Source: Octopus bimaculoides
Taxonomy: Eukaryota
Reading direction: 5' to 3'
Length of the DNA: 35,324 nucleotides
NCBI RefSeq assembly: GCF_001194135.2
Contig: NC_068991.1
Coordinates: 29,279,375 to 29,314,698 of the forward strand
Numbering within the stretch: the stretch's first letter is position 1; the number at the start of each line of letters is the position of its first letter. Shown in pieces: positions 1 to 23,715 of the stretch. The translations under genes and the position numbers were made by a program. The notes below the pieces were generated by a model. The model saw nothing but the letters and a program-made list of their open reading frames with translations. It had not been told where the DNA came from and made no database searches.

Positions 1-166
1 AATACCGGTCTTCTCTAAATTTTATATATATATACATGTATGCATACATAGACATGACAGGAGTAAATAAACACTCAAACAAGCATCATTTTATGTTTAT
101 TTCAACTTAAAAAGCTTTGTTAACTGACATTCTTATGTTTCAGATTCAATATGTGACAGTTTAATC

Positions 167-1140: not shown

Positions 1141-1257
1141 GATATTCATATTATAATGATTAATGAACAATTAATAAATAACTTGAAATTATAATATTAG
1201 ATTTAAATAATTTAAATGATTGTCTATTTACTCCTGTCATGTCTATATATGTAATTA

Positions 1258-2019: not shown

Positions 2020-2216
2020 CTCTATCACAAAAGAGATATCTTTATTTGCTGAGAAGTTGTGTCCATTAATACAGGAGAGTTCATCCGTAATATTTTTCAA
2101 GCCACGAAATATGTTAATGTGACACTTCTCATAATTGATGACATCGTATGACGTCACGTTGTATATGGACAGCTGTTCCTCTGAGAGATCCTTGCATTGA
2201 TGATCTGGAGTATAAC
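2020..2216 (-). CDS. SLC22/organic cation transporter-like gene, second coding exon (large extracellular loop after TM1)
   Basis: Acceptor ttttcttttcag|GT at 2217/2216 and donor GAG|gtaaga at 2020/2019. 197 nt, phase 1 to phase 0, stop-free: (G)YTPDHQCKDLSEEQLSIYNVTSYDVINYEKCHINIFRGLKNITDELSCINGHNFSANKDISFVIE. It matches the SLC22 loop pattern (H-x-C ... C ... C ... S(F/I)VxE, normally followed by WDLVC), has three N-x-S/T sequons, and joins in frame to the 9190 donor. Confidence 0.88.
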
Positions 2217-5660: not shown

Positions 5661-6285
5661 ATTAATAATAATCCCTTCTACTATAGGCACAATGCCTGAA
5701 ATTTTGGAGGAGGTGAATAGTCGATTACATCGACCTCAGTGTTTCACTGGTGTTTGATTTATCCACCCCGAAAGGATGAAAGGCAAACTCGAGATTCACG
5801 GAACTTGAACTCAGAACGTGCAGACAGACGAAGTGCCGCAAAGCATTTTGCCCGGCGTGCTAACGATTCCGTCAGTTCGCCGCCTTAGTAATCCCTTCTA
5901 CTATAGGCACAATGCCTGAAATTTGGTCGGAGTGGATAAGTCGATCACATCGACCAAAGTACTTGACAGGTACTTATTTCATCGACCCTGAAGAGGTGAA
6001 AGGCAAAGTCAACCTCAGCGGAGTTTGAAGTCAGAATGCAAAGGCGGACAAAATACCTATTTCGTTATTGCCCACAAGGGGCTAAACATAGAGGGAACAA
6101 ACAAGAACAGACGAACGGATTAAGTCGATTACATCGACCCCAGTGCGTAACTGGTACTTAATTTATCGACCCCGAAAGGATGAAAGGCAAAGTCGACCTC
6201 GGCGGAATTTGAACTCAGAACGTAACGGCGGACAAAATACCGCTAAGCATTTTGGCCGGCGTGCTAACGATTCTGCCATCTCGTC
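5661..6285 (-). mobile_element. Three head-to-tail copies of octopus-type tRNA SINE
   Basis: Repeated blocks aatcccttctactataggcacaatgcctgaaat...gtcgattacatcgacc...gaaaggatgaaaggcaaa...gaactcagaacg...ggcgtgctaacgattc at about 5661-5885, 5887-6060 (5'-truncated) and 6061-6285 (variant tail). Confidence 0.85.

Positions 6286-6348
<63 letters not shown>
6286..6348. repeat. (AAT)n microsatellite
   Basis: About 20 perfect AAT units. Confidence 0.95.
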
Positions 6349-6352
6349 CCTA

Positions 6353-6395
6353 TCACATATAGCATTTCGGTCGAAACTAGACTTCTTCAGTGTGA
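6353..6395 (-). ncRNA. Minimal type I hammerhead ribozyme motif (Penelope-like-element type)
   Basis: Minus strand: TCACA CTGAAGA AGTC tagtttc GACC GAAA T gct A TA TGTGA. Core CUGANGA/GAAA/UH, helix I UCACA:UGUGA, helix II GUC:GAC with an A.C closing mismatch, and a 2-bp helix III. Confidence 0.6.
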
Positions 6396-8104
6396 AGTTG
6401 AATTTATGACTCTGAAGATGAGGACAGATATAATTCTTCAGATGAGAAAGTTAGTGACTGAGTGTATTCATGAGTTTTTTTTACCAAATCAGAAAGGCAA
6501 ATAGATAGACAGACAAATATCTCGCATGACAGTGAGAATACAGGATACATTCACATATTTACTGCTTTAAACTTTGTTAAACTTGTTTTAAGTAAAGCAT
6601 GCCATTTCACGCTGCGCCATTCCTACAGCTGAAAACGAATAGCATCTAAGTGATGGAGCAGCCCCACCCCACTTCGACTGTCACATCGTCTGTCTTCCGC
6701 TGAGTCAAGTGTGGAAGGGCCGAGAGAAAGTCTCTCTGTTGGTGGTTTCATAGACATCCAAAAGAGTTAGCGAAGGCACGGTACATTTATATGACGATTA
6801 TGGTGGGGACTGAGATCGCTGAAGTTTGGCATAAGCAATATGTGGAATTTTATGATTATTTTATTCACCCCAAAATAATTTAGATATAAATCTACAGGTG
6901 AATGGTATAGTGGGTAAAATGAGGTCGGTGGGGTTATGATCGTAAAATAAATGAAGGCACTTTTTTACTTTTTCTTTGTTTATCCACCTCCACAATGGAG
7001 TTCTTATCTGACAGAAATGAAGATATCGTGTCACTCAAGTTATTTTGTGTAATTTTCATTCTATTCTATTGTAGACTACTACAGTTTCACTGGGTCTGGT
7101 GGGAGCATGGTTCAAGGGAGAAGCGGACTTCAGACAATAACCTATCTTAAATATACTGTCAGACAACAATACTCGATCGATGGAACATTTTGTGTACATT
7201 ATTTAATGTTATAACAGTTGGATTCGACCCTACATTTTGCCACTTAGAAATCACAAGTGGATCATGTGCACAAACCTATGATACAACAAACTTAAAATCA
7301 GTAAATATTAATGTCCTCTCTATTCCCATTGTGAAACTTGCATCGAATATCGTGTGCTGAAGGTTTCCAATCTTTTGGGAAGGTAAAGTCAATAAAATCA
7401 GTCCAATTCTTAATTGGTATTTCATCAGTTCTTGAAGAATAAATGACAAAGTGCAGCTAGAGAGATTTGAACCTACAACGTAAGGACAGTAACTAAATAA
7501 AGTTATTTCAAATTAAAAGCTACTTTTTTATGTATACAATCATGCTTATATAGACATCTGCACACATGCATACAAACACCTACACATACTCAGTTACATA
7601 TACATGTACAGATCTAAACGCACTTACATATATGCACACACACACACACACATGTACATGCACATGTATATACATATACACGGACAAACGCTCACACACA
7701 TATCTATACGGGATCGTGTGCGTACATTTTCAATGACGATTAACGGACTTTTCTGGTAGTTAGGCACCTTATCCAAGGGAGATTAATCTGCTGTCTGCTT
7801 TACTTTAGTTTTATGATAATGCAGCATCAAGACAACAAGCTACCTTAAAGATGTACCCAGACAAAAAAATACTCGTTCCATGGATAATTGTGTATACGTA
7901 ATCTAATTCGTTGAGAGCAAATCAACATCTAGGAAGGGGAAGACTAATTTTCATCTTCGAAGGCTAATGCAACAGAGCCCTGCTCAAAACAAATTACAAT
8001 TTACAAGGACTTACTTTATTCTGTAATTTCTCCCACTAGTTTCGGTCTGTGGCTAAGGCTGGATTACTGTATTTTTTAATATATTCGATATTTTCTTTTT
8101 AATT

Positions 8105-8310
8105 TTGCTACGAGGCCAGCAGTTTTGAGGGGAAGAGAAAGTCGATTATATCAACCTCAATACCTGACTGGTACTTTATTTCATCGAACATAAAAGGAAT
8201 GAAATACACAGGTGACATCGGCAGAATTTAAACACAGAATCGTAAGAAATGCCGTCAGGCATTTTGTCTGACATGCTAAAGATTTTGGCAGATGTTCACC
8301 TTAATATATT
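8105..8310 (-). mobile_element. Old, diverged copy of octopus-type tRNA SINE
   Basis: gtcgattatatcaacc...actggtactttatttcatcga...aatgccgtcaggcattttgtctgacatgctaaaga, similar to the copies at 5661-6285. Confidence 0.6.
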
Positions 8311-8332
8311 TGATAATATTCCTTTCAGCAGA

Positions 8333-8455
8333 GGCGCAGGCGTGGCCGTGGTAAGAAGTTTGCTGCCCAGCCATATGGTTCCAGGTTCAGTTCCACCGTG
8401 TGGCACCTTGGGCAAGTGTCTTTTACTATAGCATCGAGCCGACCAAATTTTTGTG
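8333..8455 (+). mobile_element. tRNA-derived CORE-type SINE 5' part (second family)
   Basis: ggcgtggccgtggtaag (A-box-like), ggttcagttcc (B-box-like), then caccttgggcaagtgtctt, which resembles the CORE-domain ccttgggcaagt. Confidence 0.6.
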
Positions 8456-8459
8456 AGGG

Positions 8460-8985
8460 TGTTAGTCGATTACCTTAATCCCAGTACTTGACTGGTACTT
8501 ATTTTATTGGCCCCCTCCACCGCTACCGAAATAATGAAACGAAATTTGAACTCAGAACGTAAAGCCTGACGAAATGCCGCCAAGCTTTTTCTTCGGCGTG
8601 CTAGCGTGTCTACCAGCTCGTCGCCTTTAAAGTTTGTGTAGGCAAGAGATTGTTATCGTCTACTTAATTTGAACTGGAACTCAAATGTGAAACAACTACT
8701 GCAAGATGTGTTACTCCGTTGCACAACCACAATAATAATAATCCTTTCTACTGATGGCACAAGGCCTGAAATTTGGGGTAGCGGTTAAGTCGATTACATC
8801 GGCCCCAGTACTCATTTGGTACTTAATCTATCGATCCCAAGAGGATGAAAGGCAAAGTTGACCTCGGTGGAATTCGAACTGAAAGTGGGCCTCGGTAGAA
8901 TTTGAATCCACAAGGTAAAGCATTGGGAGAAATGTCGTTAAGTATTTTATCCGATGTGCCAATGATTCTGCCATCCTGCTGCTTG
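8460..8985 (-). mobile_element. Two further octopus-type SINE copies (about 8460-8628 and 8731-8985)
   Basis: Same motifs (gtcgattac..., gaactcagaacg, ggcgtgctag; aataataatcctttctact...ggcacaaggcctgaaat). The second copy has a locally duplicated ggaattcgaac/gaatttgaatc segment. Confidence 0.8.
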
Positions 8986-9189
8986 AAGAAGTGGAGTAGA
9001 ACTAGGGAATATATTTCTTATTGACAAAATGACTCCATCCCTAAGATCAGGAATCTTGTAAATTTAATACAAAAGTGATTTTTAAAAATTATATAATCAC
9101 TTATTTTCTGTATATTTACGATGTATGACACAATTCTATGGTAAGTATAAATGAAGTGGAGAATAAAATGTAATGTATATATAACTTAC

Positions 9190-9334
9190 CTATTGCCAGG
9201 AATAGGAAAAGACTATGAGATACAATCAAAAGAGAAGACGAAACAACTAGCAGCTGCCTAATTTGGTAATTACCATAAGTCTTTAAATTGATGAATAGAT
9301 TATCCAAATCATAAACGGCCTGTGTACCAGCCAT
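9190..9334 (-). CDS. SLC22/organic cation transporter-like gene, first coding exon 1a (N-terminal tail plus TM1)
   Basis: ATG at 9334; MAGTQAVYDLDNLFINLKTYGNYQIRQLLVVSSSLLIVSHSLFLFLAI plus G, then donor G|gtaagt at 9190/9189 (145 nt, phase 1). Fits the SLC22 N-terminal pattern (F/L)Dxxxxxxxx(F/Y)Gx(Y/F)Q followed by a hydrophobic helix, and splices in frame to 2216. Confidence 0.85.
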
Positions 9335-9629
9335 CTACGAAGCTTGTGGCCTTGTTATTGGTTGATGATATTATTGGTATTGTTTTCAGTGATCAATAAT
9401 AGTCGCCGTGAAGTTGTCGCTGTTATGCTGTGAAATCGCTGTTCTTATTATATTGGTGTGGTTAATATTGTTAGCGGTCGTAGTGATATTGTTCTTAATG
9501 GCGGAGTTGTTCTTTCGTGACTGTGATGGTAGTGGTTGTTGGTTGTTGGTCGAGCTAGTGCTTACGATGGCGGGGGTGGTGCGTGGTGGTGGTAGTGGTA
9601 ATGATTGTATGATATATTCCATATATCGA

Positions 9630-9788
9630 TCTTCTTCTTCTTCTTCTTCTGCTTCTTCTTCTTCTTCTTCTTCTTCTTCTTCTTCTTCTTCTTCTTCTTC
9701 TTCTTCTTCTTCTTCTTCTTCTTCTTCTTCTTCTTCTTCTTCTTCTTCTTCTTCTTCTTCTTCTTCTTCCTCCTCCTCCTCCTCCTCC
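9630..9788. repeat. (TTC)n then (CCT)n polypyrimidine/polypurine microsatellite
   Basis: Near-perfect TTC run of about 140 bp with one G interruption, followed by CCT units. It explains the poly-E, poly-S, poly-R and poly-F ORFs. Confidence 0.95.
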
Positions 9789-9984
9789 ACTTACTAAGCC
9801 GTCTGAACCTTTTAACCTTTCATTTACCCATAAGTTCATATATTCTTTGTTTCTGGCCTTTATTCTATCGTTCGATCATTCAGCCATTTATTCAGCGGTT
9901 CCACTTTTAAATCTTAACAACTTCATTCCATTCATATAGGAGACCAAATACTGAACACATACACAGACACACACATACCTTTAT

Positions 9985-10349
9985 ATGTTATATATATATA
10001 TATATATATACATATGTACGTATGCATGTATGTATGTATGTATGTATGTATGTATGTATGTATGTATGTATGCATATATGTAAAAATACTCACACACGGA
10101 CACACACGGTGAGGTTAAAATCAGGAAAAAGAAAGGAAGAATGATGATCGGGGAAAGCAAAAAAGCAGTTCATTTGGACAGATATTTTAATTTAATCAAC
10201 GTTAACCTTCCTCCTCCTCCTCATCATCATCATTATCATCATCATCATCGTTATTATCATTGTCAATTTAGCTATTGTCTTACATATCAAATTCAAAGAA
10301 TATGAAATGTGGATGAGACAAACAGCAGCACCAACACCACCACTTCTAA

Positions 10350-10418
<69 letters not shown>

Positions 10419-10521
10419 GCTGTTGTTGTTGTTATTGTTAAATTATTTTCAGAGTGTCTGAGCATAGCTACAGGATGTACCTAGGTAAGTACGGGTGGTA
10501 GATGAGGGAAAGATGGAAAAT

Positions 10522-10561
<40 letters not shown>

Positions 10562-10849
10562 AAAAGAAAGAAAGAATGAATGGATGAATGAATGAAAAAA
10601 GAAAGAAGGAAATTGTGTATAAGGCTTAGACAGAGAAAGAAAGGGAGAGAGTGTGAGTGAAAAAGGGTGTGAGATGCAAGGGAATAAAATTGAGTTGTGA
10701 CGTCAATTCAAATAATTTGGTCCATCCGTAGTTTTGAACTTCCCTTGTAACCTACATATATTAAATGATGTCTAACAACATCCTGATGAAGAATCTGTCT
10801 GTCTATCTATCTATCTATCTATCTATCTGTTTGTCAATTCATCTGTCCA

Positions 10850-10910
<61 letters not shown>

Positions 10911-10980
10911 CTGTATATTACACAGTTACACATATATACATACACACACACACATATGCACACACGCGCACACACACATG
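9985..10980. repeat. Compound microsatellite cluster: (TA)n, (TATG)n, (CAT)n, (TTA)n, (AGAT)n, (TATC)n, (TC)n, (CA)n
   Basis: Directly visible simple-repeat runs. Confidence 0.9.
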
Positions 10981-11439
10981 TAACAGTTTACAGATATTTT
11001 TTACGAATAAAACTGGAGAACTCTGTACTTTCAGAGGAATAAAACATGTTGTTATATAGTCTGTTATTGGTAATACATCGCAATTTTTTTTGAAAAACAG
11101 TCATCATAAGATGCTTTCTATCAGTTCCGTGAGATATATGAGTTATCATTACGTTGTGTAACCGATGATTTTATTTTGGCTAGAGAATAATATTGTGAGA
11201 TACATGGCTCATTACATATAAATATTATTAGGTGTGGTCTATTTCCCTTTGCTATATAGAAGAAGAAAGACTTTAAGATAATTAAGTTGAAGAATTTTAA
11301 ATGTATTTCTGAGGAAAAGAGGAGATAAATAAACACTTCCTAAATATACCATAGAGTGCATTTGATAAAGTGTGATGAAATAAGGATTCTCTGTTAGTGA
11401 TAAAAGGAAAGAAATGTGTATTTGTTTGTATTCGTTTGT

Positions 11440-11451
11440 ATGTATGTGTAT

Positions 11452-11497
<46 letters not shown>

Positions 11498-11568
11498 NNN
11501 NNNNNNNNNNNNNNNNNNNNNNNNNNNNNNNNNNNNNNNNNNNNNNNNNNNNNNNNNNNNNNNNNNNN

Positions 11569-11614
<46 letters not shown>

Positions 11615-11625
11615 CGAGAGAGATC
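11440..11625. repeat. (GT)n and (GA)n microsatellites flanking an assembly gap
   Basis: Directly visible; N gap at 11498-11568. Confidence 0.9.
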
Positions 11626-11894
11626 GTTCCTAGTAATTAGATCAGTATTGATCCTTTCTGCAATATAGAAAGGAGCGTTGTGTGCAAAAAAAAAAAAAAA
11701 TACTATGTAGGAAGCTTGTCGCGTAAATACTTTCTTATAAAAACGACATGAAGGTACGTAAATTCGACTAAAAATTAAAAACCTGTAACCATATCAATCT
11801 GATCTCAGATATATAATATCCCAACGTAATTGTCTGTAAGTATACCAATACCTTTTAAGCTACACTTTGCTTTGATATTAAATCGCAGCGAATT

Positions 11895-12320
11895 AAGGCG
11901 AGCTGACAGAAACGTTAGCTCGCCGGGTGAAATGCTTAGCAGTATTTCTTCTGTCTTTGTGTTCTGAGTTCAAATTTCGCCGAGGTCGACTTTTCCTTCA
12001 TCCTTTCGGGGTCGATAAATTAAGTACCAGTTGCGTAGTGGGGTAAATCCAATCGACTGGTCTCCTCCCCAAAAATTTCGGGCCTTGTGCCTAGGGCAGA
12101 AACGGATTAAATCGTAGCGAGCTGGCAGAATTGTTAGCACACCTGACATAGTGCTTAGCGGCATTTCGCTTGTCTTTGCGTTCGGAGTTCAAATACCACT
12201 GATGTGGGCTTTGCATCTCATCCTTTCGGGTTCAGTAAAATAAATATCAGTTGAGCACTGGGGTCAGTGAAATCAACTAGCCTCCTCCCACAAAATTTCA
12301 AGTATTGTACTTATTGTAGA
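11895..12320 (+). mobile_element. Head-to-tail dimer of octopus-type tRNA SINE
   Basis: ggcgagctgacagaaacgttagc...ctgagttcaaat...gggccttgtgcc, followed within a few bases by gcgagctggcagaattgttagc...ggagttcaaat...aaaatttca. Confidence 0.85.
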
Positions 12321-12649
12321 AGTTGAGAACATTAAGAGATATATGAATATATTCAAAAAGGAAGGAACCGAAACACCTTTTGGAAGTTAAACAATATTTC
12401 TAATAAACTCATACATAATATTATTATCGTAAACAGAAAGACTAGAGTACAAATTGATAATGATGTAAAGTTTAGATAAAAATTATAGCTAATTAATTTT
12501 AATCAAATTACAAATTAAAATCGATAAGTAAATTTGAAGCAATATTGATTGTATTATTAATTAAGCAATATTAACAGTAAGATTAGAAACCAAACTATAG
12601 CAGTATTGTATGTAATTTTCTACGTAATATTGATGTGATGACACATCCT

Positions 12650-13200
12650 CGTAATGTCAAGGAAGCGTGTTCTATTCTTTGTACCATACTTCTGGTAGAG
12701 GGAGCACGGGATTTTGCTACAGAACCCCAGACACAAAATTAGAACATCAGTATCCTCAGCACTAATAACAACAGCATAGTGCAGGAGTCGCATGCCAGTT
12801 TCTTTTTGTGATGACTTTAACTCAGAGGCTTCCTCTCACCTTTCTGTCGTGATTTTGAAGCAGAAGTATTGCAAAAGACCTTTGTCCCCCAGTTTTGCTC
12901 TGTATGTTGGTCCCTTCCATTCATCCACCAGGAACTTTATCAGACTTGCTTTGTTGGAAGGGATGCTGAACAACTTACGCCACTACTGGATAGTGTGCCC
13001 AAGTACTATGCTTCTGAAGTCGATTCCTGTTTCTGATCCCCTATTAATCCTTTGTGCATTTTTTTTTATGGATGTTTCCTTGTAAACATCAATGACAACA
13101 TCAGTACAATGAATATGGGCTCCTTCGTGGAGAACATACGTTTCGTCACTTCTTTTCAGTCTCTGTACCAAGCTCATCTCGTCAAATCTGTTTTCTCAGG
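12650..13200 (-). pseudogene. Degenerate fragment of a PIN/XPG-like (EEADT...EDTDV family) repeat-encoded protein
   Basis: Minus strand reads MSLVQ...DVVIDVYKETSIKKNAQRINRGSETGIDFRSIVLGHTIQ*WRKLFSIPSNKASLIKFLVDEWK...EEASELKSSQKETGMRLLH...VVISAEDTDVLILCLGFCSKIPCSLYQKYGTKNRTRFLDI, with stops and indels. Family recognised from motif memory; TE class uncertain. Confidence 0.6.
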
Positions 13201-13859
13201 GCACTATGAAATTCAACCATGGTGATTGTTTTTGCATTCCAGGATTGCAGAAACAGGTGTGGTTCGAGCGATGTTAACGCGACTTCTTCCAGGAAGATGA
13301 GTCAACCCTTCGGGGCCATCTCATTTTCCAGTCAGAGGCTTGATGAAAAATAGAAAACGGATCCCCCACCTGTAACGCATACGTTTGGAGTCTTGTCACT
13401 TTCCCTTAGAAATTTGATTCCTTTTGGTTGTCGTTTAATGCAATTAATTATCTGGAGGTCTATCTAATTTCTGAAAAGATCTTGTCATGCCTCAATTGAT
13501 ATCGGCCTTCTTTCAATGGTGTTAGCCGTAGGAACGTGATTATAATAACATGATTATGGTAATGTGTTGCCTACTAGTCTAGAGTAGGAATTTTTAGAAT
13601 GAAAAAGAATTAATTCATGGGATAAGATATCATCTAATTCCGTGACACCTTTAAATAGAATTATTATCAGCCATTTTGAAATAATTATAAAAGCGCATTA
13701 CATGATAAGTCATGTTTCTCCAGGTTAATCATATTTCTTGTTAAATAAAGATGGAAGATTTAAAAACATTTTTTTATTCATCATGCGGTTGTCGACTAAT
13801 TAATCCCAGCATGTGATACGAAAGTCTTTGATTCAATAAAATAACGAAGGGTCATTGGT

Positions 13860-14680
13860 TAGTGTTATGGCAGCAGTACACTGCAGTAGTGTGTGTCTGT
13901 TTGGTGCCGAGTCCTCTTCGAGGACCAAAGTGCGCCTTGCAAGTGCTCATTCGCCCATGGTGGTATTTCAGTTTCCAAAATGTCGCTAATGTATCGTTGA
14001 GTGTTGATCTTAACACCCGAGTGCACAAAAACCTTGGAGAGACCTTCCAGTGGCTGTCACCGCCGCCCAAACTATAACTGACTTTGTCATCGATTTACGA
14101 GTCTACCCTCGACGGAGCCAAATACACTCCAAAGTTGATAATTCTGGGGGTTTACTGTCTGTTCGATGTCAAAAATTTTCACCAGTGAATACCAGATTGA
14201 GCAGCGTGCCTTCAGCTATCTGACGCAGCATAAGACAACTTTTCTCCAGTCTCTTGGCCTTATAAACTTGCGCGAGCTCATGACGACGGATCATCTTATA
14301 TGGGTGGGTCCTGAGATTCTCCTTCAGCACTTGATACATCGATGTTCGGCTTACTTTTGCTGTGGCAGCTAGTTTTCTGGCGGAACCATAAGGATTTCAC
14401 CGTATCTTCTCTTTGGTACATTTGATAAACTGAGTGGTCCGCACACTTCTTTTTCGGCTACGTCCAAGTCGATCAGCGGTGGAACCAATCTCTTGAAATT
14501 TCTTGACAATTTTCCAGACTGTTCGGTTAATTTTAACCTTTTTCGCTACAACTGTATTACTTTCGCCTCTTTTGTGGAGATTTATGATTTTATTTCGGTC
14601 TATAGCCATTATCCAATTTATAAATATGAATTCATTCAGTTTGAAACAAAAAGAAGATATACTAAGCTTTTATAATTATA
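13860..14680 (-). mobile_element. Tc1/mariner superfamily transposase remnant, probably maT (DD37D)-like
   Basis: MAIDRNKIINLHKRGESN...VWKIVKKFQEIGSTADRLGRSRKRSVRT (HTH), then SARKLA...LVFTGEKIFDIEQ...NPQNYQLW (from SDEK), VFVHSGVKINTQRYISDILE...DSAP. Truncated before the third catalytic residue; the 5' end runs into a gap. Confidence 0.75.
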
Positions 14681-15149
14681 TNNNNNNNNNNNNNNNNNNN
14701 NNNNNNNNNNNNNNNNNNNNNNNNNNNNNNNNNNNNNNNNNNNNNNNNNNNNNNNNNNNNNNNNNNNNNNNNNNNNNNNNNNNNNNNNNNNNNNNNNNNN
14801 NNNNNNNNNNNNNNNNNNNNNNNNNNNNNNNNNNNNNNNNNNNNNNNNNNNNNNNNNNNNNNNNNNNNNNNNNNNNNNNNNNNNNNNNNNNNNNNNNNNN
14901 NNNNNNNNNNNNNNNNNNNNNNNNNNNNNNNNNNNNNNNNNNNNNNNNNNNNNNNNNNNNNNNNNNNNNNNNNNNNNNNNNNNNNNNNNNNNNNNNNNNN
15001 NNNNNNNNNNNNNNNNNNNNNNNNNNNNNNNNNNNNNNNNNNNNNNNNNNNNNNNNNNNNNNNNNNNNNNNNNNNNNNNNNNNNNNNNNNNNNNNNNNNN
15101 NNNNNNNNNNNNNNNNNNNNNNNNNNNNNNNNNNNNNNNNNNNNNNAAG

Positions 15150-17095
15150 GAACCTGTAAGTCGTGATGGTGTTGGTGGCTTTCGAAGAAAAGTATTAAAG
15201 GAAGGAAGCAAACAAAATAATAGAACAGAGTTAGTAGTGATATATTCTAAAAATAGAGTTAAACCTATTTTAAAGATGGTAGAAGGGGGACCAGTTTGAT
15301 AACTCGAGTTGGTTGGGGTTACCTATAGGGAGTTGTGGGAGTACGTTGTGTGGTCATTTGTGCATTTGTGTCTGTGATAGAATTTGAATGTATGGAAAAA
15401 ACGGTGATTACAGGTGCTAAGTGCTTCGTTATATCGATTAAGTAGAGTGGGAGAATTGTATTTTAAAATATAGAACGCCTCCTTTAAGCAAAGCTTGCAA
15501 TTAGAGCGCTAGCCCTGGTATGGAATTCCAGAGTCCAGAATGGACCATTTTAAAGTATACTGGATATTTGTGTTTTTGAGGTGGTGAACGTGGTTGACTA
15601 GTTTTTGTAGATTTGCTGTGTTTGTCATATCTAAAAGAGTGAAGGTGGGCTGCATAGCGTTGCTTGAAATTTTTAGTTGAACCTATGTATGCAGCTGTAG
15701 AATTATGTAGCAGATAGCTTACAGTGCATTTATATATTACGTTATATCTTACACAATGCGTTTGCAGCGGGCGGATTGCCCCAGAGCGACAGTTACAAAT
15801 AGATGAAACTTGGGGGTTGTGTTCTGTGGTGGATGAGGCAATATTGTTGGAGGATATGTTGAATGAGGATGCAGAAGAATCTAGATCAATGAAATCATTA
15901 CTGTTATAGTTATTATTCCCTCCATTGTTATTATTGTAGGATATAGTAATATTATTTCCGGGTATACTAGTGGGCTGGGATCTATTATGGTCGTGTTCAA
16001 GTGTACGAGTGTCAGTGTTAGATGTACGTATATGAATGTCTATGTTGGGTATATGCATGCACTGAGTGCTAGTATTGCCATAATTGTAGTTGAGTGAGTT
16101 TTGATAATAAAGTGAGAGTTTATGTTTATTAGAAGTTGCTATAATAGATTCGAAGCTAGGCGTGGTTGAGTAAGACAATTCAAAGTGGATCCGTTAAATA
16201 TAGAATGGTATTTATGTTGTCGGGGGAAGTTAAAGTCAAGTATTTTGAAGAAAAATTTAGCTAAGTTTTTAGTGTTAAGTGAGAATNNNNNNNNNNNNNN
16301 NNNNNNNNNNNNNNNNNNNNNNNNNNNNNNNNNNNNNNNNNNTGTACCACACTATAGAGCGGCCACCGCTTTTTTTGGGGGTTCTGTGTACGTTGTAATC
16401 TAAGCATTTAGGTGGAGAAGAGTTGTCCACATTTTTGGTGTTGCTAATTGCTTTATTTATCTTGGATTTAGCCCTAGTGTTATAAGTGTGTTTGTGGGGT
16501 CTGTTGGAAACTGTGGGTGGTTGGTTGCGGATGTGATGATTGGTATGTCTTTGGGATGTGATTTGGGATATAAATTATTTAAGTCTGGTGTTATGGATGT
16601 ATTTTATTTGTTGGGAGAAACCACTAGCGGCGAGAGCTTGATTGTAGTATGGAGCGTGACTGTTGAAGATTTCTTCGGAAGAGGATAGATCAGATATGCG
16701 GGTTGAAATACCCATGACTTTGTTATCGAAAGTAGATTTGTGGTGATTAGAGTGAACGTTGAGGTATTTCAGGTATTGGTTAGGTTTATGATAGGGGGAG
16801 TATTGTGAGTTTGACAAGTTTAGAGTAACGTCTAGAAAGTTAGCCGTTTTATATGCGTTTTCAAATGTGATGGATAGATTTAGATTAGAGAAGAATTTGT
16901 GTAGATCCAGTCCTTTCCAGAAAAGATTTATTAATGGCCTTGGTAAGTAATAAGGCGTCGTCCCTATATAGACCTCCGCGGATATTAGGGAAATGTGAGC
17001 GCAGTTGGTGAAGTATATATAACCCAACTAAATCAGTGGCCTGAGCGGAATCGGATGATCCCATGGTTACATCGAATAAGTTGTTATAGTTATTA
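15150..17095 (-). mobile_element. 5'-truncated Penelope-like element (RT plus C-terminal GIY-YIG), Naiad-type signature
   Basis: Across frameshifts: FDVTMGSSDSAQATDLVGLYILH, GGLYRDDALL, NFLDVTLNL...YSPYHKPN...ISTRISDLSSSEEIFNSHAPYYNQALAASGF, LAKFFFKILDFNFP...SYSTTP, CNCR...C...NVIYKCTV...YIGSTKNFKQRYAAHLHSFR, LKEAFYIL...LLNRYNEALSTCNH. Confidence 0.85.
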
Positions 17096-17137
17096 TTATG
17101 TTGGTTAGCTCGGCACCAGAGCTATATATATATATAG

Positions 17138-17177
<40 letters not shown>

Positions 17178-17710
17178 NNNNNNNNNNNNNNNNNNNNNNN
17201 NNNNNNNNNNNNNNNNNNNNNNNNNNNNNNNNNNNNNNNNNNNNNNNNNNNNNNNNNNNNNNNNNNNNNNNNNNNNNNNNNNNNNNNNNNNNNNNNNNNN
17301 NNNNNNNNNNNNNNNNNNNNNNNNNNNNNNNNNNNNNNNNNNNNNNNNNNNNNNNNNNNNNNNNNNNNNNNNNNNNNNNNNNNNNNNNNNNNNNNNNNNN
17401 NNNNNNNNNNNNNNNNNNNNNNNNNNNNNNNNNNNNNNNNNNNNNNNNNNNNNNNNNNNNNNNNNNNNNNNNNNNNNNNNNNNNNNNNNNNNNNNNNNNN
17501 NNNNNNNNNNNNNNNNNNNNNNNNNNNNNNNNNNNNNNNNNNNNNNNNNNNNNNNNNNNNNNNNNNNNNNNNNNNNNNNNNNNNNNNNNNNNNNNNNNNN
17601 NNNNNNNNNNNNNNNNNNNNNNNNNNNNNNNNNNNNNNNNNNNNNNNNNNNNNNNNNNNNNNNNNNNNNNNNNNNNNNNNNNNNNNNNNNNNNNNNNNNN
17701 NNNNNNNNNN

Positions 17711-17846
17711 CAACAACAACAACAACAACAGCAACAACAACAACAACAATAACAACAACAACAGCAACAACAACAACAGCAACAACAACAACAATAACAA
17801 CAACAACAGCAACAACAACAACAGCAACAACAACAACAACAACAAC

Positions 17847-17897
<51 letters not shown>
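17711..17897. repeat. (AAC/AGC)n then (AAT)n microsatellite
   Basis: Directly visible; preceded by a gap (17178-17710) and a (TA)n run. Confidence 0.95.
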
Positions 17898-19424
17898 TCC
17901 TTGAGTTGCCAGAAGATGGATTTGGTATTCATGTTTATTTCGTACAATTGCCGTTTCGATCCACCCTGCTACTACTATCTCCTATGGGTGGGGGACTCCG
18001 TTCAGCATGTGTCGCATTCATCTTGCTGTCTGGTTCTCACCTAGAACATCCATACACAAAGTTGTTTCTCGCTAAATATCTTGAGTTTTGGCTATCATGT
18101 TGGTTAGGGAATGAAACATTGCTACAATTTTCGATTACTATTATCTTTCTATAATAAGAATTGGAAACATTTGTGAAATAGACAAATAACTGTTAATAAA
18201 AAAAGATGAATGTCGGGCAAGTGAGTGGATAGCTAGGGATGGATTGAGTTACACTGGGGTTTAAGACAAAGGAATGGTATTAGAAAAAGAAGGAAAGATA
18301 TATGCCGGCTAGAATGTCTAGGGGATGAAAGATTGTGTAGCTAGCTACCTAGCTTTGGTCAAGGATGTGTATACATACATTCACACTCCAACCCGCTCGT
18401 CCATAAACTCACACAAAGGATGTTGCACCACCCGCCCATATGGTCAATTTCGGCTGTAGTTCGTATAATTTATGATTGGAAGACAATCTCTCCACAAATC
18501 TGTCATCATAGTCACCATGGCGTGAAATGGAGGGCATCGTGCATTTGTTAGAAATACAAAGTGTTTTCTTGTATCTTCATGTGGTTGTTTTTTATTAACC
18601 TTTCAAATCGGGGCAGATTTTCTGCCGCTTTTGTACATACGTACCCAGCTACATATATACATCTACTTTTATATGCACACACGCGCGCACCCCCCACCCA
18701 CACAGGTGTACACACACACACACATACACACAGGCATNNNNNNNNNNNNNNNNNNNNNNNNNNNNNNNNNNNNNNNNNNNNNNNNNNNNNNNTATATATA
18801 TATATATATATGCGCATATACATATATATATATTCCCACACACATGCATGTGCGATCCACGTAATACCTCGCCCCACTCTCTCCACACACGCAGACACAC
18901 ATGTATACGTATATCTACACACGCCCATACGCACACATGTACGTGCACACATACACATACACATTCCTGCATCACGTTCATTTTTCGAGCAGTAACTAAT
19001 TGTTGGCATATATTATTATTATTATTATTAATGTACAGCTGCATTGTAAGGTTACATCTCTGAAATTATATGAAAATCCATATCTGCACACAAGCGTAAA
19101 GGCAAAGAAAGGCATATTTTAGCCTCTCTACATAATTCATCTGTTACGTTAGTCTAGAGGCTATGTTCCTACATGATACCTTTGGAAGGAGACAAAGAGT
19201 CACTTATGTATGCAAACTAAAAGATACTAGAACATAGCCTCTCCGATTCATTAATGTTTATCAAACATTTACATATTTTTTCTCCCCACATCGTTCGTAA
19301 TACTTCAATGTTATCTACTGTTTCTCTCTCCTATTGCTCTCTGTAACTTGTCTCTGGTTTCATCGATTTACGTGGATAAAGAGATACAAATAAATACCAC
19401 CCATGAATAGGCAGTTAGTCTCCG

Positions 19425-19570
19425 TAACTTACCGGTTCGTCAAAAGAGACCGACAGCATAAATATTAAACTTGAAAATTAAGATCTGGGCTCGATTTATT
19501 TCACTAAATCCCTTCAATGCGGTGCCCCTACATCGCCGCACTCTAATGACTCAAACGAATAAAAGATATA
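19425..19570 (+). mobile_element. 3' part of a related octopus SINE family
   Basis: ctgggctcgatttatttcactaaatcccttcaatgcggtgcccc...tctaatgactcaaac resembles the tail of a common octopus SINE variant (recognised from memory). Confidence 0.45.
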
Positions 19571-21222
19571 AATGATGCTTGACAAACTTGGAATTTGTTA
19601 AACATTTTCAAATCAATAAAAATTCCGTCTGAATCATAATTTTCCTGTGACATATTGGTTAACTAATCTTATGTCAAGTGTTTGCCTCTGAAGTTTTTAC
19701 TGTCAGTCAGTTTAGGGAAAAATAAATCAACATCCAGGTTGATACTGCTGTCCTTATGACTTTACAGCAAGCCTATCATTAGAACTCTCTCTCTCTCTCT
19801 ACCACACCGTACTTTCTTCCTCTTTTTCTTTCTTCCTTTCTTCCTTTCTCTCTCTCTTTCTTTCTTTCTTTCTTTCCTGCCTTCTCCCCCACTCTCTTGC
19901 GTTGTCTTTATATGTATGTCTGCATTTATGTATGTGTGTGTGTGAATGTCAGGTCACTCTTAGTGCCACAGGTAACATGTAACCCAGTGCAACCTTTTGC
20001 GCAGTCGGACCGACATCAACAAATCGGCAACCCTGGTTAATAACGTGGTTTTCTTTGGACACCCTGCAGGACGAAAAACAAACCTGTTAAATGACGAATT
20101 AACTCAGCAGAGTCAACAGTCAATGATCAATAGTTTATTGATGAGTATTGTTATAGCTCACATATAGGATGCGAAACAGCTCATTTTCTTAGCAGTCAAC
20201 GTTGTTTACAGCAGAATGTGTTAGACAGTCAACGTCCCCATCCAAAAAAAAAAAAAAAAAATAGTAAAAAGAAAATCTGAGGTCATCCTCTCTCTTCTAA
20301 CCACTTTCTTTGTACAAGAACAATAACTAATCCTAAGCCTCCCTATTCAGATATTTATGAAGTATCATTTCCAACGACTGCACTCGAGACGAGGAGATTC
20401 TAAGCAGCCTCAAACTGTCCTCTGTAACATTTGGAAGGTGCTAGTCTGTCATTTAAACCTTCATAATAAAGTTCTCATCCTCTGCACCGTTTGTGTCCAC
20501 TCTCCTGTATGGGTTCAAGGCGTGAACTACATACAGCCAAGTCATTAATACTCTGGAAGCCTTTAACATATCTTACAGCCATAAGGCTATTTCTAATCAT
20601 CTGGCGAGATAGTATTAAACACACAGTAATCATCTGTTATGTCAACACCAGGAATCATTGATTACACGATATACAGGTACGGGACATACAGTGTACGTAT
20701 TTGAATATTATCTCCCGTGTAGGACCCTCTAGAGTTGGCTATCCCATGGTCAAATTATGAATAAAGGGACTGAAAGTTGTACTGTAATAGTAGTTGAGTA
20801 GTTGTGATGGGACGAGGTACAGAAACGTCATCAGATTGTCACAAGAAACTGTTTTTCATTCTCCATTTCTTTCTCTCTCCCTTTCACTAATTCACATCTA
20901 CTCCCTCTCTTTCTTCTACGACACACGCGCGCGCGCACACATACACACACAGATGCACATGTATGTATATGTGTGTGTATATGTATGTGTGTCTATAAAG
21001 AGATGAAAGATAGAAAATGGAATTCACGAGACTTTATTCAAAACCACTACAATCGTTTCGACTCATCATGCACCCGTACCTTACAGGTGAGATGCTGTAA
21101 ATCAATTGTTATGCATTATACGTGCACGTGCTTCTCCTCAGGTGACTTTTCAAAGAAGTACCTCGATTTCTACTGGTCGCGTTACTTATTTCTAAAACAA
21201 CAGATTTTTAGTTAGTGTAGCG

Positions 21223-21417
21223 TTCACCTATCGCGGTTTATTATTTAAGCTTACGTCGATTCCTCCGTGATGTTGTTTTGCATTTATAATAAAATAAATA
21301 TATGCAAATTATAAAGATGATAAAAAAACAGTACAGTACTGTTTCTACTTTGCGAATTTTCACCTATCGCGGAGGCTTTTGAAACGCAACACCCGCAATA
21401 GTCGAAGGATTACTGTA
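21223..21417. mobile_element. Terminus of a pogo/Tigger-like MITE
   Basis: Reverse complement of 21417-21330 is TA-cagtaatccttcgactattgcgggtgttgcg..., a Tigger-type terminus next to TA. ttcacctatcgcgg occurs twice (21223-21236, 21359-21372). Partner TIR not found. Confidence 0.45.
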
Positions 21418-22784
21418 CATAAAATTAATTATAAGAAATTAAACCAGAAAATAATGACAGTTAGTGAGGACATACTCAGGGATAATTTATCTGACAAAGA
21501 CTAATAATAAGAAAATAGTCAAGCCTGTTCTAATAATTACAATGAAATTAATAAAGCAATCACCGGGATACCACCACTGACAGTGAATATGTTGATAATC
21601 TGAAAGTTGATAAAAGTCATAATAGAAGCGACGGACTTAACAAAATCCAATTATATATAGACACACATACACACAAATATAAAGAGGAAAGAACTTATAC
21701 ACATATACACGAATTTACTTATACATATATACACGAATTCACCTATACAAATATATACGTTTATATACACACACATATATATACGTACATATATACATAT
21801 ACGCCTGCACACACATACATACATACATACATACATACATACATACATACGTGCATGCATGCATACATTACCATTGCAGTGGCATGCATACATTACCATT
21901 ACAGTGTGGATGTGCCTCAATTTGCTGGAAATAAAACACTACATCTTCAAAGTCCAAGTAATTGGGGTTGTTCAATAAATAATTCCATTAATCCTTTCGA
22001 TGATAAGACGCCCTATATTGTAACTCCTAATAAAAGAACATAATAAACGTCCGTAATATGCAGATTCTTCAGACCCCTAGTATGTGCAATTGTGGCGGTT
22101 AACCGAGTCATTTTATTTAAATGTAGCTTCTCTCTAAACAATCTTTATGGGAAAGTGTTTATCTGCACATCTTGCTAAGTACCTCTCACCAAACCCCACT
22201 TTTCAATTCGTTTCATCTTCATTAAGTGAATACTAATTAAGAAATCTAACTTTTTCAATGACAGGCTTCAATATGCGAAAGATGCTTCATTTGAAAATGC
22301 TTACCGCACAGATTTTCTTGAAGTCAGGCAACACGTTTCTAATACACTTCCATCCTTTGTGGGTCTCGTCGATGCCCGCTATCTTCCGGAAAGTTGGTTG
22401 TGGTCATTCTGAACAGGACCATCTACTTATCTCTAATTCTAGCAATAGTAAAGTTGGTATGTGGATCTGTTTGAAACTCTCTTCTAAACTGTCTCTGCAC
22501 TTGGACTGCCTTTCTAAACTTTTAATTTTATAATTGCTTATAATTCAGTAAAGAGACTCTCTTTATTACAAAATACAGATCCCTTTTGAACGCATCTACA
22601 ACAAACGACATATCCACCACGGCCTTAGAATAACACAAACACACACGCAAATATTAAAAATGATACATTCAAGAGATTCCAGGAATTCATTAAAAAACAG
22701 TCTCAATCACACCTATAAACCATAACGAGTCACTTTTAGTTCACTTGACCATTTAACACCTTACTACTCTCATACTACCTACAT

Positions 22785-22901
22785 TTCTTCTTCTTCTTCT
22801 TCTTCTTCTTCTTCTTCTTCTTCTTCTTCTTCTTCTTCTTCTTCTTCTTCTTCTTCTTCTTCTTCTTCTTCTTCTTCTTCTTCTTCTTCTTCTTCTTCTT
22901 C
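22785..22901. repeat. (TTC)39 microsatellite
   Basis: Perfect run, inside the first copy of a diverged local duplication. Confidence 0.95.
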
Positions 22902-23573
22902 TCCGCCACCCCCTTCCTAACTTTACCACCATTGCTGTTTAGAATAACACTTACGCAAATTTCATAAACAAAATATCCACAAGAGATATTTCAGGAATTC
23001 AATCACTACCACCATCTACAACGGATCACGTTCAGGGCATTTAACAATTTAACATACGACTATCATGGCACACCCGCATTCTTCTTCTGCTCCTTGTATT
23101 TGAACACCATGCAAATATTCTTTTAAAAACTTTTCTTTTAATTTTTCCAAAATTTAATTGTTTTCCATACTTAGAGTTGAATAAAGGCTCAATGACAAAC
23201 GGGTACTGAAATGTTTTTTATAAAATTATTTTAGCATTTTCTACCTTAACTTTTTTTTTCCATATATATATANNNNNNNNNNNNNNNNNNNNNNNNNNNN
23301 NNNNNNNNNNNNNNNNNNNNNNNNNNNNNNNNNNNNNNNNNNNNNNNNNNNNNNNNNNNNNNNNNNNNNNNNNNNNNNNNNNNNNNNTATACGGAAAGGC
23401 AGGAGGATCCATGGGTGGAGAGTCATTGAACATAGAAAAGCTTGAACTGGGGCAAAAGAAGAGCAGCTCAACTGTCTGCTCTTTCAACCACATTACCACT
23501 TTATTTCAGTAAATTAGTTCTGACATCAAAATTTAAAAAAATAAATAACCAAGAATCGTAAATCACAGCTTAC

Positions 23574-23715
23574 CCAGGAAGACAACTTGTAGCAATGTAA
23601 AAGAAACCGTCAGCAATGTTATTAGAATTACAAAAGTTTGAAGTCTTTGAAATTTTCCGAATTGTGTAAGATCAGTAAAGAGACCGTCAAAATTGTATTC
23701 CTTACTCTGTGTCAT
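23574..23715 (-). CDS. Second SLC22-like first coding exon 1b (N-terminal tail plus TM1); alternative first exon or paralogue
   Basis: ATG at 23715; MTQSKEYNFDGLFTDLTQFGKFQRLQTFVILITLLTVSFTLLQVVFL plus G, then donor G|gtaagc at 23574/23573 (142 nt, phase 1). Aligns without gaps to exon 1a from Tyr to the junction Gly: 15/42 identical by manual count. Confidence 0.82.

What the first reader, a model, noticed from the sequence alone, without database searches (positions are those of the whole stretch)
9190..23715. Two intact, diverged SLC22 first exons upstream of one shared exon 2: candidate variable-first-exon transporter locus
Seen in sequence: exon 1a (9334-9190) and exon 1b (23715-23574) each start with ATG and encode the N-tail plus TM1. 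They align without gaps at only 15/42 identity yet both stay open, and both end at the same Gly codon with a phase-1 GT donor. Either one splices in frame to exon 2 at 2216 (...LAI-G-YTPDHQC or ...VFL-G-YTPDHQC). I found no exon 2 or later SLC22 exons between 9.4 and 23.5 kb, and the N gaps there total only about 1.3 kb, too little for the rest of a roughly 550-aa SLC22 if the sizes are right. Established: alternative first exons spliced to common exons are known for vertebrate UGT1A and clustered protocadherins, and TM1 contributes to the SLC22 substrate cavity. Inference: two promoters could give transporters differing in N-tail/TM1, and so in trafficking or substrate range.
Basis: partly seen in the sequence, partly recalled or inferred. 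Interest (0 to 1): 0.8.

Follow-up and report, generated by a model that had tools for sequence, protein, structure and literature searches.

The report
Octopus SLC22 transporter, alternative first exons
The window holds the front end of an Octopus bimaculoides organic-cation-transporter (SLC22) gene in which two diverged first exons, each encoding the N-tail plus first membrane helix, sit upstream of one shared exon 2; this layout is conserved across octopods and NCBI's predicted isoforms already record it, though I found no paper on it.

Summary
On the minus strand, exon 1a (9334-9190), exon 1b (23715-23574) and exon 2 (2216-2019) are as described: own ATG, in-frame stop just upstream, phase-1 GT donors at the same Gly codon, 15/42 identity. 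No gap touches an exon.

The window's 1a+exon 2 and 1b+exon 2 match, residue for residue, the N-termini of RefSeq isoforms X1 (XP_014786633.2) and X2 (XP_052827625.1) of O. bimaculoides "solute carrier family 22 member 21". Isoform X3 uses a further first exon outside the window. O. sinensis has four full-length isoforms (566/567 aa) that differ only in exon 1. The gap-free Argonauta hians locus has a distal b-type and a proximal a-type first exon before one exon 2 and a complete 554-aa gene.

Near-identical full-length probes find no exon 3 or later in the window. The intervals hold transposon debris.

- a third, dead exon-1 copy (19653-19543);
- a tandem duplicate of the whole 5' module (LOC106869705);
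- that the models for this locus lack exon 3 and the last exon.

Transcript use rests on predicted models, and functional consequences are untested. This is a new member of a known kind and is moderately interesting.

The parts
23574..23715 (-). Exon 1b: distal alternative first coding exon (b1 class), 142 nt, encoding the N-tail plus TM1. Ends in the first base of a Gly codon, followed by donor GTAAGC.
   Evidence: Searches give sequence and frame. It is 100% identical to the N-terminus of XP_052827625.1, isoform X2. An in-frame stop lies 3 codons upstream. It is 89.6% identical to the O. sinensis isoform X2 exon. dN/dS is 0.24 against the paralogous copy in L001, p = 0.013.
19543..19653 (-). 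Exon 1c: decayed third exon-1 copy (b3-like), 36 codons then TAG, with no donor at the homologous place. Homology ends where a repeat begins.
   Evidence: tblastn E = 7e-7 to the LOC106869705 X1 exon. Sequence. The 3' part matches a repeat also present at L001 40868-41000.
9190..9334 (-). Exon 1a: proximal alternative first coding exon (a class), 145 nt, encoding the N-tail plus TM1. Same split Gly codon, donor GTAAGT.
   Evidence: It is 100% identical to the N-terminus of XP_014786633.2, isoform X1. A stop codon lies directly before the ATG. Orthologous a-type exons exist in O. vulgaris (L003 10001-10144), O. sinensis (L004 16479-16622) and Argonauta hians (L002 13338-13482, also 145 nt, 49% identity, same AI|G + GT end).
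2019..2216 (-). Shared exon 2: start of the large extracellular loop (YTPDHQC...SFVIE), with 3 Cys and N-glycosylation sequons. It has the only acceptor. Its donor is in phase 0.
   Evidence: It is the single tblastn hit for exon 2 in the window. It is present in all three RefSeq isoforms of the gene.
9335..23573 (-). Interval between 1b and 1a: intron for 1b transcripts, and it should hold the 1a promoter. It contains transposon fragments, microsatellites and six N gaps (1,295 nt in total), and no SLC22 exon apart from the 1c relic.
   Evidence: Pfam hits: Sleeping Beauty/Tc1 HTH at 14400-14609, GIY-YIG (weak, E = 0.008, below Pfam's cut-off) at 15504-16178. No hit beyond residue 117 with full-length probes.
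5888..13180 (-). A 7.3-kb segment that holds exon 1a and has only 0.63 kb as its counterpart in the paralogous 5' module (L001 28474-29107).
   Evidence: Collinear blastn blocks. tblastn with 1a finds no a-type exon in L001.

Best explanation
The window is the 5' end of an Octopus bimaculoides SLC22 (organic cation transporter-like) gene, which RefSeq names 'solute carrier family 22 member 21'.

It holds an array of homologous first coding exons. Each has its own ATG, about 20 residues of cytosolic tail, TM1 and a phase-1 GT donor, and none can serve as an internal coding exon. A single exon 2 follows.

The likely mechanism is promoter choice. A transcript that starts at 1b removes 1c and 1a as part of a 21-kb intron. 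A transcript that starts at 1a uses the 7-kb intron. Both join the only acceptor, at 2216. The products would share everything from the YTPDHQC loop onward and differ in the N-tail and TM1.

The array evolves by birth and death. An a class (proximal) and a b class (distal) predate the Octopus/Argonauta split. The b class expanded to three types in Octopus. One copy in this window (1c) is dead.

Shown: the exons, their frames, their conservation, the absence of other SLC22 exons in the readable sequence, and the existence of matching predicted isoforms.

Inferred: separate promoters, real use of each exon in mRNA, and any functional difference between products.
For: - The exons and splice signals are as stated, with in-frame stops directly upstream of each ATG.
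- A profile of the exon 1+2 products hits only SLC22 chains in the PDB (OCT1, OCT2, OCT3, OCTN2), always at residues 3-53. This covers TM1 and the TPDHxC motif; best E = 6e-4.
- RefSeq X1, X2 and X3 (P0102, P0103, P0105) are three different first exons joined to the window's exon 2 and the same body. 1a and 1b match the window 100%.
- O. sinensis X1-X4 (P0097, P0101, P0098, P0095; 567/566 aa; cluster representative carries PF00083 and PF07690) differ only in exon 1.
- Argonauta hians L002 has no gaps. Its b-type exon is at 10001-10144, its a-type exon at 13338-13482, exon 2 at 14253-14449 and exons 3-10 run to 19902. No other SLC22 exon lies between the two first exons.
- The 16 exon-1 sequences fall into four classes. 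The a class is 49 codons (48 in the O. vulgaris and one O. sinensis copy, which lack one codon) and ends in AIG in the octopods. The b classes are 48 codons and end in FLG.
- Between O. bimaculoides and O. sinensis, 1a is 89.8% and 1b 89.6% identical, against 91.2% for the common body.
- 1b against its paralogue in L001 gives dN/dS = 0.24, binomial p = 0.013.
- Exon 1a is 95.8% identical to the O. vulgaris exon, with one in-frame 3-nt indel. Its flanks are 90-92% identical and carry 39 gap columns.
Against: - No transcript reads were examined. The isoforms are Gnomon predictions.
- Exon 2 here and exon 2' of the neighbouring duplicated module differ at only 8 of 198 nt, and the first 25 nt are identical. 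Short junction reads could therefore be assigned to the wrong copy.
- Some models require splicing over 60 kb or more, past another exon 2 (O. bimaculoides X3) or past a whole paralogous gene (O. sinensis). Such models could be chaining artefacts.
- All three O. bimaculoides models lack exon 3 (TM2-TM3) and the last exon. This copy may be incomplete or misassembled.
- 1a against O. vulgaris shows about 5 replacement changes and 1 silent change. Exon 2 against exon 2' gives dN/dS = 0.74 and is no better conserved than its flanks. Selection signals over short distances are therefore weak.
- Transcript-derived proteins from decapodiform cephalopods show a single N-terminus per cluster.
Confidence: 0.8

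Rival explanations
1. Exon 1b is an orphan left by duplication of the 5' module. Only the proximal 1a is really used, and the X2/X3/X4 isoforms are annotation artefacts caused by near-identical exon 2 copies in tandem paralogues.
For: The locus is a tandem cluster with a duplicated 5' module about 88% identical to the window. Exon 2 and exon 2' are 96% identical. One copy (1c) is demonstrably dead. The paralogous module has lost its a-type exon. In gap-free O. vulgaris and O. sinensis, the gene copy I could read has no b-type exon within 10 and 16.5 kb upstream of its a-type exon.
Against: 1b is intact, with ATG, frame and donor, and is 89.6% identical to its O. sinensis counterpart. That matches the constant body. 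dN/dS is 0.24. Argonauta keeps a b-type exon upstream of the a-type exon in a single compact gene, and its annotated 554-aa product uses the b-type exon. NCBI's pipeline normally builds alternative variants from transcript evidence (my knowledge; not checked here).
Confidence: 0.12
2. A complete paralogous gene, or at least its exon 2 and exon 3, lies hidden in the N gaps between 1b and 1a. On this view 1b and 1a belong to two separate genes.
For: Six gaps of estimated size lie in the interval. The cluster does contain tandem paralogues.
Against: The gaps total 1,295 nt, whereas exons 2-10 of even the compact Argonauta gene span 5.6 kb. The readable 12.9 kb of the interval holds no exon 2 or later. 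Order across the gaps is collinear with the paralogous module. The RefSeq models on the chromosome-level assembly join 1b to the window's exon 2.
Confidence: 0.03
3. This O. bimaculoides copy is a decaying gene. Its first exons are real relics of a variable-exon array, but the locus no longer makes a working transporter.
For: All three RefSeq products lack the 77-codon exon 3 (TM2, the GRK motif, TM3) and end in read-through sequence in place of the last exon. One first exon (1c) is dead. The neighbouring module yields only 119-aa open frames. dN/dS for exon 2 is 0.74.
Against: The assembly is full of gaps, so missing exons may simply be unassembled. Exons 4-9 are 91% identical to O. sinensis and stay open. 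An exon-3-skipped isoform is also annotated beside the full one in O. vulgaris (P0104 against P0077). Skipping could therefore be real splicing and not loss.
Confidence: 0.15

Closest known systems
UGT1A locus of vertebrates (variable first exons spliced to common exons 2-5)
   Same: Tandem, homologous first coding exons, each with its own start codon and a donor but no usable acceptor, are joined one at a time to one set of common exons. The array grows and loses members by duplication and decay, and dead copies lie among live ones.
   Different: In UGT1A the variable exon encodes a whole substrate-binding domain of about 285 residues. Here it encodes 48-49 residues (N-tail plus one membrane helix). 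There are 2-4 members here, not 9-13. Promoter-per-exon and transcript use are established for UGT1A and only inferred here.
Clustered protocadherins (Pcdh alpha/gamma variable exons plus constant exons)
   Same: Promoter choice selects one of several tandem first exons, which is spliced over the downstream ones to shared exons.
   Different: Pcdh variable exons encode the whole ectodomain, the membrane helix and part of the tail, and come in dozens with stochastic neuronal choice. Nothing is known here about cell-type choice. From my own knowledge (not checked here), octopus protocadherin expansions are not described as using this layout.
SLC2A9 (GLUT9a/GLUT9b) alternative first exons
   Same: An MFS transporter with two promoters and two first coding exons gives products with different N-termini. 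For GLUT9 this changes membrane targeting (my knowledge; not checked here).
   Different: The GLUT9 variants differ only in the cytosolic tail, and the two exons are not homologous duplicates. Here TM1 itself is exchanged and the exons are paralogues.
SLC12A1 (NKCC2) mutually exclusive exon 4 variants A/B/F
   Same: Duplicated exons encoding a membrane helix of a transporter are used one at a time, giving isoforms with different transport properties (my knowledge; not checked here).
   Different: Those are internal cassette exons chosen by splicing, not first exons chosen by promoter.
Mammalian SLC22 transporters OCT1-3 and OCTN2 (solved structures 8et6, 8et9, 7zh0, 9pdq)
   Same: The N-tail, TM1 and the (F/Y)TP(D/E)HxC start of the large loop align residue for residue. 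Full-length octopod relatives carry PF00083 and PF07690.
   Different: In these searches I found no description of a tandem array of homologous first exons for any SLC22 gene. The TM1 cavity residue Tyr36/Cys36 of OCT1 (PMC10055046) aligns with Leu in both 1a and 1b.

Membership tests
SLC22 family of MFS transporters | N-terminal cytosolic tail, TM1, then a conserved motif that opens the large extracellular loop | tested here: met
   The profile of exon 1+2 products hits only SLC22 chains in the PDB, at residues 3-53, aligning VFLGYTPDHQC with VFLGFTPDHRC. Pfam alone gives no hit on the 113-114 aa fragment.
SLC22 family of MFS transporters | Large TM1-TM2 loop with conserved cysteines and N-glycosylation sites | tested here: met
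   Exon 2 encodes 3 Cys and the sequons NVT and NIT. It is homologous over residues 49-115 to full-length molluscan SLC22 proteins.
SLC22 family of MFS transporters | Twelve membrane helices with the Sugar_tr/MFS_1 domain downstream | tested here: inconclusive
   These exons are not in the window. The RefSeq products of this gene carry PF00083 but lack exon 3 and the last exon. The O. sinensis, O. vulgaris and Argonauta relatives are complete at 554-567 aa with PF00083 and PF07690.
SLC22 family of MFS transporters | Transport of organic cations or anions | not testable with these tools
   This needs uptake assays.
Variable-first-exon gene (UGT1A / clustered Pcdh type) | Two or more tandem, homologous first coding exons, each with its own start codon | tested here: met
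   1a, 1b and the dead 1c are in the window. In-frame stops lie just upstream of each ATG. Four classes appear across species.
Variable-first-exon gene (UGT1A / clustered Pcdh type) | All variable exons end in a donor of the same phase and share one downstream acceptor | tested here: met
   Phase-1 GT donors follow the same Gly codon. There is a single exon 2 in the window. The same holds in Argonauta.
Variable-first-exon gene (UGT1A / clustered Pcdh type) | No constant exons between the variable exons | tested here: met
   No exon 2 or later lies between 1b and 1a in readable sequence, nor in gap-free Argonauta. About 1.3 kb of N in the window remains unread.
Variable-first-exon gene (UGT1A / clustered Pcdh type) | Mature transcripts that join each variable exon to the common exons | not tested
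   Only predicted isoforms were seen: XP_014786633.2, XP_052827625.1 and XP_052827626.1 in O. bimaculoides, and O. sinensis XP_036363379.1 to XP_036363382.1. No reads could be examined.
Variable-first-exon gene (UGT1A / clustered Pcdh type) | A separate promoter in front of each variable exon | not testable with these tools
   This needs CAGE, 5' RACE or ATAC data. The available promoter scan is for bacterial sigma-70 sites.

The most novel reading that the evidence does not exclude
The octopod SLC22 cluster may work as a true variable-exon array. Four classes of first exon, spread over tandemly duplicated 5' modules, would each be driven by its own promoter. They would be spliced over tens to more than a hundred kilobases, even across another exon 2 or a whole paralogous gene, onto common exons. 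Cell types would then express transporters with different TM1 helices and hence different gating or substrate preference. The a class carries a conserved His in TM1 where every b class has Phe.
Probability: 0.2. Interest if true: 0.65.

Novelty: new member of a known kind. Interest (0 to 1): 0.4.

Why it matters
If both first exons are used, octopods swap the first membrane helix of an organic cation transporter by promoter choice, and have kept this arrangement since before Octopus and Argonauta diverged.

TM1 lines the substrate cavity of OCT1, and in OCT2 its Tyr37 forms the thin extracellular gate with Tyr362 (PMC10055046). The isoforms are therefore a natural helix-swap experiment on SLC22 selectivity, gating or targeting. 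They would also extend the UGT1A/protocadherin style of gene organisation to a transporter family and to molluscs.

What would be new is recognising the pattern across species and testing it.

Tried and rejected
1. Human OCT1 written from memory, used as a tblastn probe. It was too distant to settle anything and was replaced by close full-length probes.

2. Two word-indexed protein searches with the window's exon 1+2. They returned only three 119-aa proteins. This suggested for a while that no full-length protein carries this N-terminus. That was a false negative. The exhaustive search and a search with a full-length query found P0080, P0077 and others. I do not use as negative evidence.

3. 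I first took L001 (LOC106869705) for the orthologous locus of another species. I rejected this when the window proved 100% identical to O. bimaculoides products. L001 is a paralogous 5' module in the same genome.

4. dN/dS on exon 2 against exon 2' (0.74, 8 changes) and exon-versus-flank identity around exon 2. These were uninformative because the whole 1.1 kb around exon 2 is 94-98% identical.

The full gene loci of O. bimaculoides and O. sinensis were too long to fetch. I could therefore neither place the window exactly nor read the b-type exons of O. sinensis as DNA.

6. Transcript-derived clusters from other cephalopods showed one N-terminus per cluster, so they gave no transcript proof of alternative first exons.

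7. Literature searches for the locus tag, SLC22 with alternative first exons, SLC22 with cephalopods, and organic cation transporter with octopus found nothing relevant.

8. Pfam on the 113-114 aa fragments gave no family.

Full report
**What is in the sequence**

- Exon 1a, 9334..9190, 145 nt: MAGTQAVYDLDNLFINLKTYGNYQIRQLLVVSSSLLIVSHSLFLFLAI|G, donor GTAAGT.
- Exon 1b, 23715..23574, 142 nt: MTQSKEYNFDGLFTDLTQFGKFQRLQTFVILITLLTVSFTLLQVVFL|G, donor GTAAGC.
- Exon 2, 2216..2019: preceded by ttttcag and followed by GTAAGA.

Either first exon gives ...G-YTPDHQC... in frame. The two first exons align without gaps at 15/42 identity, E = 1e-5 within the window. Each ATG has an in-frame stop one or three codons upstream, and each exon holds one strongly hydrophobic stretch.

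The six N runs in the finding add up to 1,295 nt. None touches an exon. The closest lies 187 nt inside the intron after 1b, so the frames do not depend on any gap. Order and orientation across the gaps agree with a paralogous copy of the region.

tblastn with exon-1 sequences finds one more copy at 19653..19543: MSQENYDSDGIFIDLKMFNKFQVCQASFISFIRLSH followed by TAG. Its homology stops in the middle of TM1, where a repeat also seen elsewhere begins. It is a dead member of the array.

**Is it SLC22?**

A profile of the exon 1+2 products hits eight distinct PDB sequences. All are SLC22 (OCT1, OCT2, OCT3, OCTN2) and all match at residues 3-53, aligning TM1 and VFLGYTPDHQC with VFLGFTPDHRC. The best E-value is 6e-4. 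Pfam gives nothing on the short fragment.

The exhaustive HMMER search found 74 relatives. Many are full-length proteins of about 550 aa that match at their N-terminal 115 residues or so.

**What the locus is**

A search with a full-length relative returned P0080, the superseded XP_014786633.1 'solute carrier family 22 member 21-like [Octopus bimaculoides]'. Its first 114 residues are identical to the window's 1a + exon 2. The cluster members settle the matter.
- XP_014786633.2, isoform X1, 442 aa: 1a + exon 2 + body.
- XP_052827625.1, isoform X2, 441 aa: 1b + the same exon 2 + the same body.
- XP_052827626.1, isoform X3, 441 aa: a further first exon (MSPKKEYDFDG...), absent from the window, + the same exon 2.

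In O. sinensis, isoforms X1-X4 (567/566/566/566 aa, full length) differ only in the first exon: one a-type and three b-types.

**Nothing else between the first exons**

I ran tblastn with the gene's own product P0102 and with full-length relatives from O. vulgaris (P0077), O. sinensis (P0097) and Argonauta (P0005). These find only 1a, 1b, 1c and exon 2 in the 35 kb. Nothing beyond residue 117 appears.

The longer open frames in the intervals are transposon fragments:
- Tc1/Sleeping Beauty HTH at 14.4-14.6 kb;
- a weak GIY-YIG hit (E = 0.008, below Pfam's cut-off) at 15.5-16.2 kb, possibly Penelope-like;
- reverse transcriptase at 27.4-27.7 kb and 30.9-31.6 kb;
- a Tc1-like element in the first 1.2 kb.

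**Gap-free relatives**

Argonauta hians (L002, no N) carries a compact, complete gene for a 554-aa product.
- b-type first exon at 10001-10144 (142 nt);
- a-type first exon at 13338-13482;
- exon 2 at 14253-14449;
- exons 3-10 running to 19902.

Its a-type exon, MANRITNLDIDEMFIKLKVYGKFQILQLVIPSVSLLMAAHVLFEYIAI|G with donor gtgagt, is also 145 nt and is 49% identical to 1a. It lies about 770 nt before exon 2. No other SLC22 exon lies between the two first exons.

This is the layout of the window, kept across a divergence at which exon 2 is only 61.5% identical. A neutral relic would not keep its ATG, frame, length and donor over that distance. A random 48-codon frame here stays open with p = 0.037.

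O. vulgaris (L003) and O. sinensis (L004) are both free of gaps. Each shows the a-type exon, a 14.3-kb intron, exon 2, exon 3 and the rest of the gene. No SLC22 exon lies in the first intron.

**Classes and constraint**

Sixteen exon-1 sequences fall into an a class and three b classes. The a class is 49 codons (48 in the O. vulgaris and one O. sinensis copy, which lack one codon), starts MA and ends in AIG in the octopods. The b classes are 48 codons and end in FLG. The a class has a conserved His in TM1 where all b classes have Phe.

Identity between O. bimaculoides and O. sinensis:

| Part | Identity |
|---|---|
| 1a | 89.8% |
| 1b | 89.6% |
| b2 class | 81% |
| b3 class | 85% |
| exon 2 | 93.8% |
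| common body | 91.2% |

The variable exons are thus about as constrained as the rest of the protein.

- 1b against its paralogue in L001 gives 8 silent and 8 replacement changes: dN/dS 0.24, p = 0.013.
- Exon 1a is 95.8% identical to the O. vulgaris exon, with one in-frame 3-nt deletion. Its flanks are 90-92% identical with many indels (Fisher p = 0.06). Most of the six exon changes are replacements.
- Exon 2 against exon 2' is uninformative.

**The wider locus**

L001 (LOC106869705, 119-aa models X1/X2) is collinear with the window at about 88% identity. It carries two intact b-type first exons and its own exon 2'. It has no a-type exon: 7.3 kb of the window, including 1a, corresponds to 0.63 kb there.

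In the chromosome-level assembly the SLC22 member 21 gene spans 147.6 kb. LOC106869705 is nested 17.0-40.1 kb from its start. The window's 21.7-kb span from 1b to exon 2 cannot fit in the 17 kb upstream and does not overlap L001. The window must therefore lie downstream, as a second tandem 5' module.

In O. sinensis the 205-kb gene encloses a whole paralogue.

Some predicted isoforms thus splice across another exon 2 or another gene. Exon 2 and exon 2' share their first 25 nt, so such models could be mis-chained. This is the main reason I hold transcript use at about 0.8 and not higher.

All three O. bimaculoides models also lack the 77-codon exon 3 (an in-frame skip) and the last exon. In this gap-rich assembly that may mean unassembled sequence, real exon skipping, or decay. 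O. vulgaris has both the exon 3-containing and exon 3-skipped forms annotated, P0077 and P0104.

**Mechanism**

The most likely mechanism is promoter choice, followed by splicing of the cap-proximal donor to the only acceptor, as in UGT1A and the clustered protocadherins.

TM1 matters in this family. Tyr36 of OCT1 lines the cavity, and Tyr37 of OCT2 forms the thin extracellular gate with Tyr362 (PMC10055046). By the profile alignment that position is Leu in both 1a and 1b. The differences lie around it: His/Phe two residues before, and Phe-Leu against Leu-Gln directly after.

Any effect on substrate range, gating or targeting is inference.

**Comparison and novelty**

The kind of system, tandem homologous first exons joined to common exons, is well known. 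I found no paper that describes it for SLC22 or for this gene in cephalopods. The isoforms themselves do sit in RefSeq as predictions.

I rate it a new member of a known kind. It is real, conserved and moderately interesting. What it needs is junction-level transcript evidence and a functional comparison of the isoforms.

Noticed in passing
window 19543-19653 (minus strand): A third exon-1 copy, b3-like, with 36 codons and then TAG. The TM1 part is replaced by a repeat that also occurs at L001 40868-41000. It is a dead member of the first-exon array.
   Followed up: yes
L001 (O. bimaculoides CM046611.1 29350529-29393632, reversed) 10001-33104: This is a tandem duplicate of the whole 5' module, about 88% identical to the window: two intact b-type first exons plus its own exon 2'. 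It is annotated as LOC106869705, with 119-aa products that read through the exon 2' donor (VRMLIF*). It is nested in the SLC22 member 21 gene. No exon 3 is seen within the readable 10 kb downstream.
   Followed up: partly
window 5888-13180: This 7.3-kb segment contains exon 1a and several copies of a short repeat. It corresponds to only 0.63 kb in the paralogous module, which therefore lacks an a-type first exon. The cause could be a deletion between repeats there or an expansion here.
   Followed up: partly
downstream of the window (RefSeq products P0102, P0103, P0105): All three O. bimaculoides isoforms skip the 77-codon exon 3 (WNLVCD..., covering TM2, the GRK motif and TM3) and end in read-through sequence in place of the last exon. 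O. vulgaris has both an exon 3-containing form (P0077) and an exon 3-skipped form (P0104).
   Followed up: partly
alignment A2 (exon-1 classes): The a class has a conserved His in TM1 (SHS, AHV, AHI) where every b class has Phe. The position aligned with the OCT1 cavity residue Tyr36/Cys36 is Leu in both 1a and 1b.
   Followed up: partly
L004 10001 (O. sinensis), product P0096: One O. sinensis paralogue has a further, non-homologous first exon (MSGVRTILIKVKCCLEG) about 6.5 kb upstream of its a-type exon. It is joined to exon 2 and gives a product without TM1.
   Followed up: no
window 1-1190, 13852-14609, 15501-17027, 27395-28431, 30024-31562: Transposon fragments: Tc1/mariner-type HTH, an ORF with a weak GIY-YIG hit (below Pfam's cut-off) next to an ORF with no Pfam hit, possibly Penelope-like, and two reverse-transcriptase fragments. 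Several are broken by the N gaps.
   Followed up: partly
window 9386-9790 and 22753-22932: Long trinucleotide runs (GAG/CTC-type) give spurious poly-Glu, poly-Ser or poly-Arg open frames just upstream of exon 1a and within the first intron. Many ACAT/TATG-type microsatellites also flank the gaps.
   Followed up: no
tool behaviour: The word-indexed protein search missed proteins whose first 114 residues are identical to the query (P0080, and the 90%-identical P0077). The exhaustive search and a full-length query found them.
   Followed up: yes
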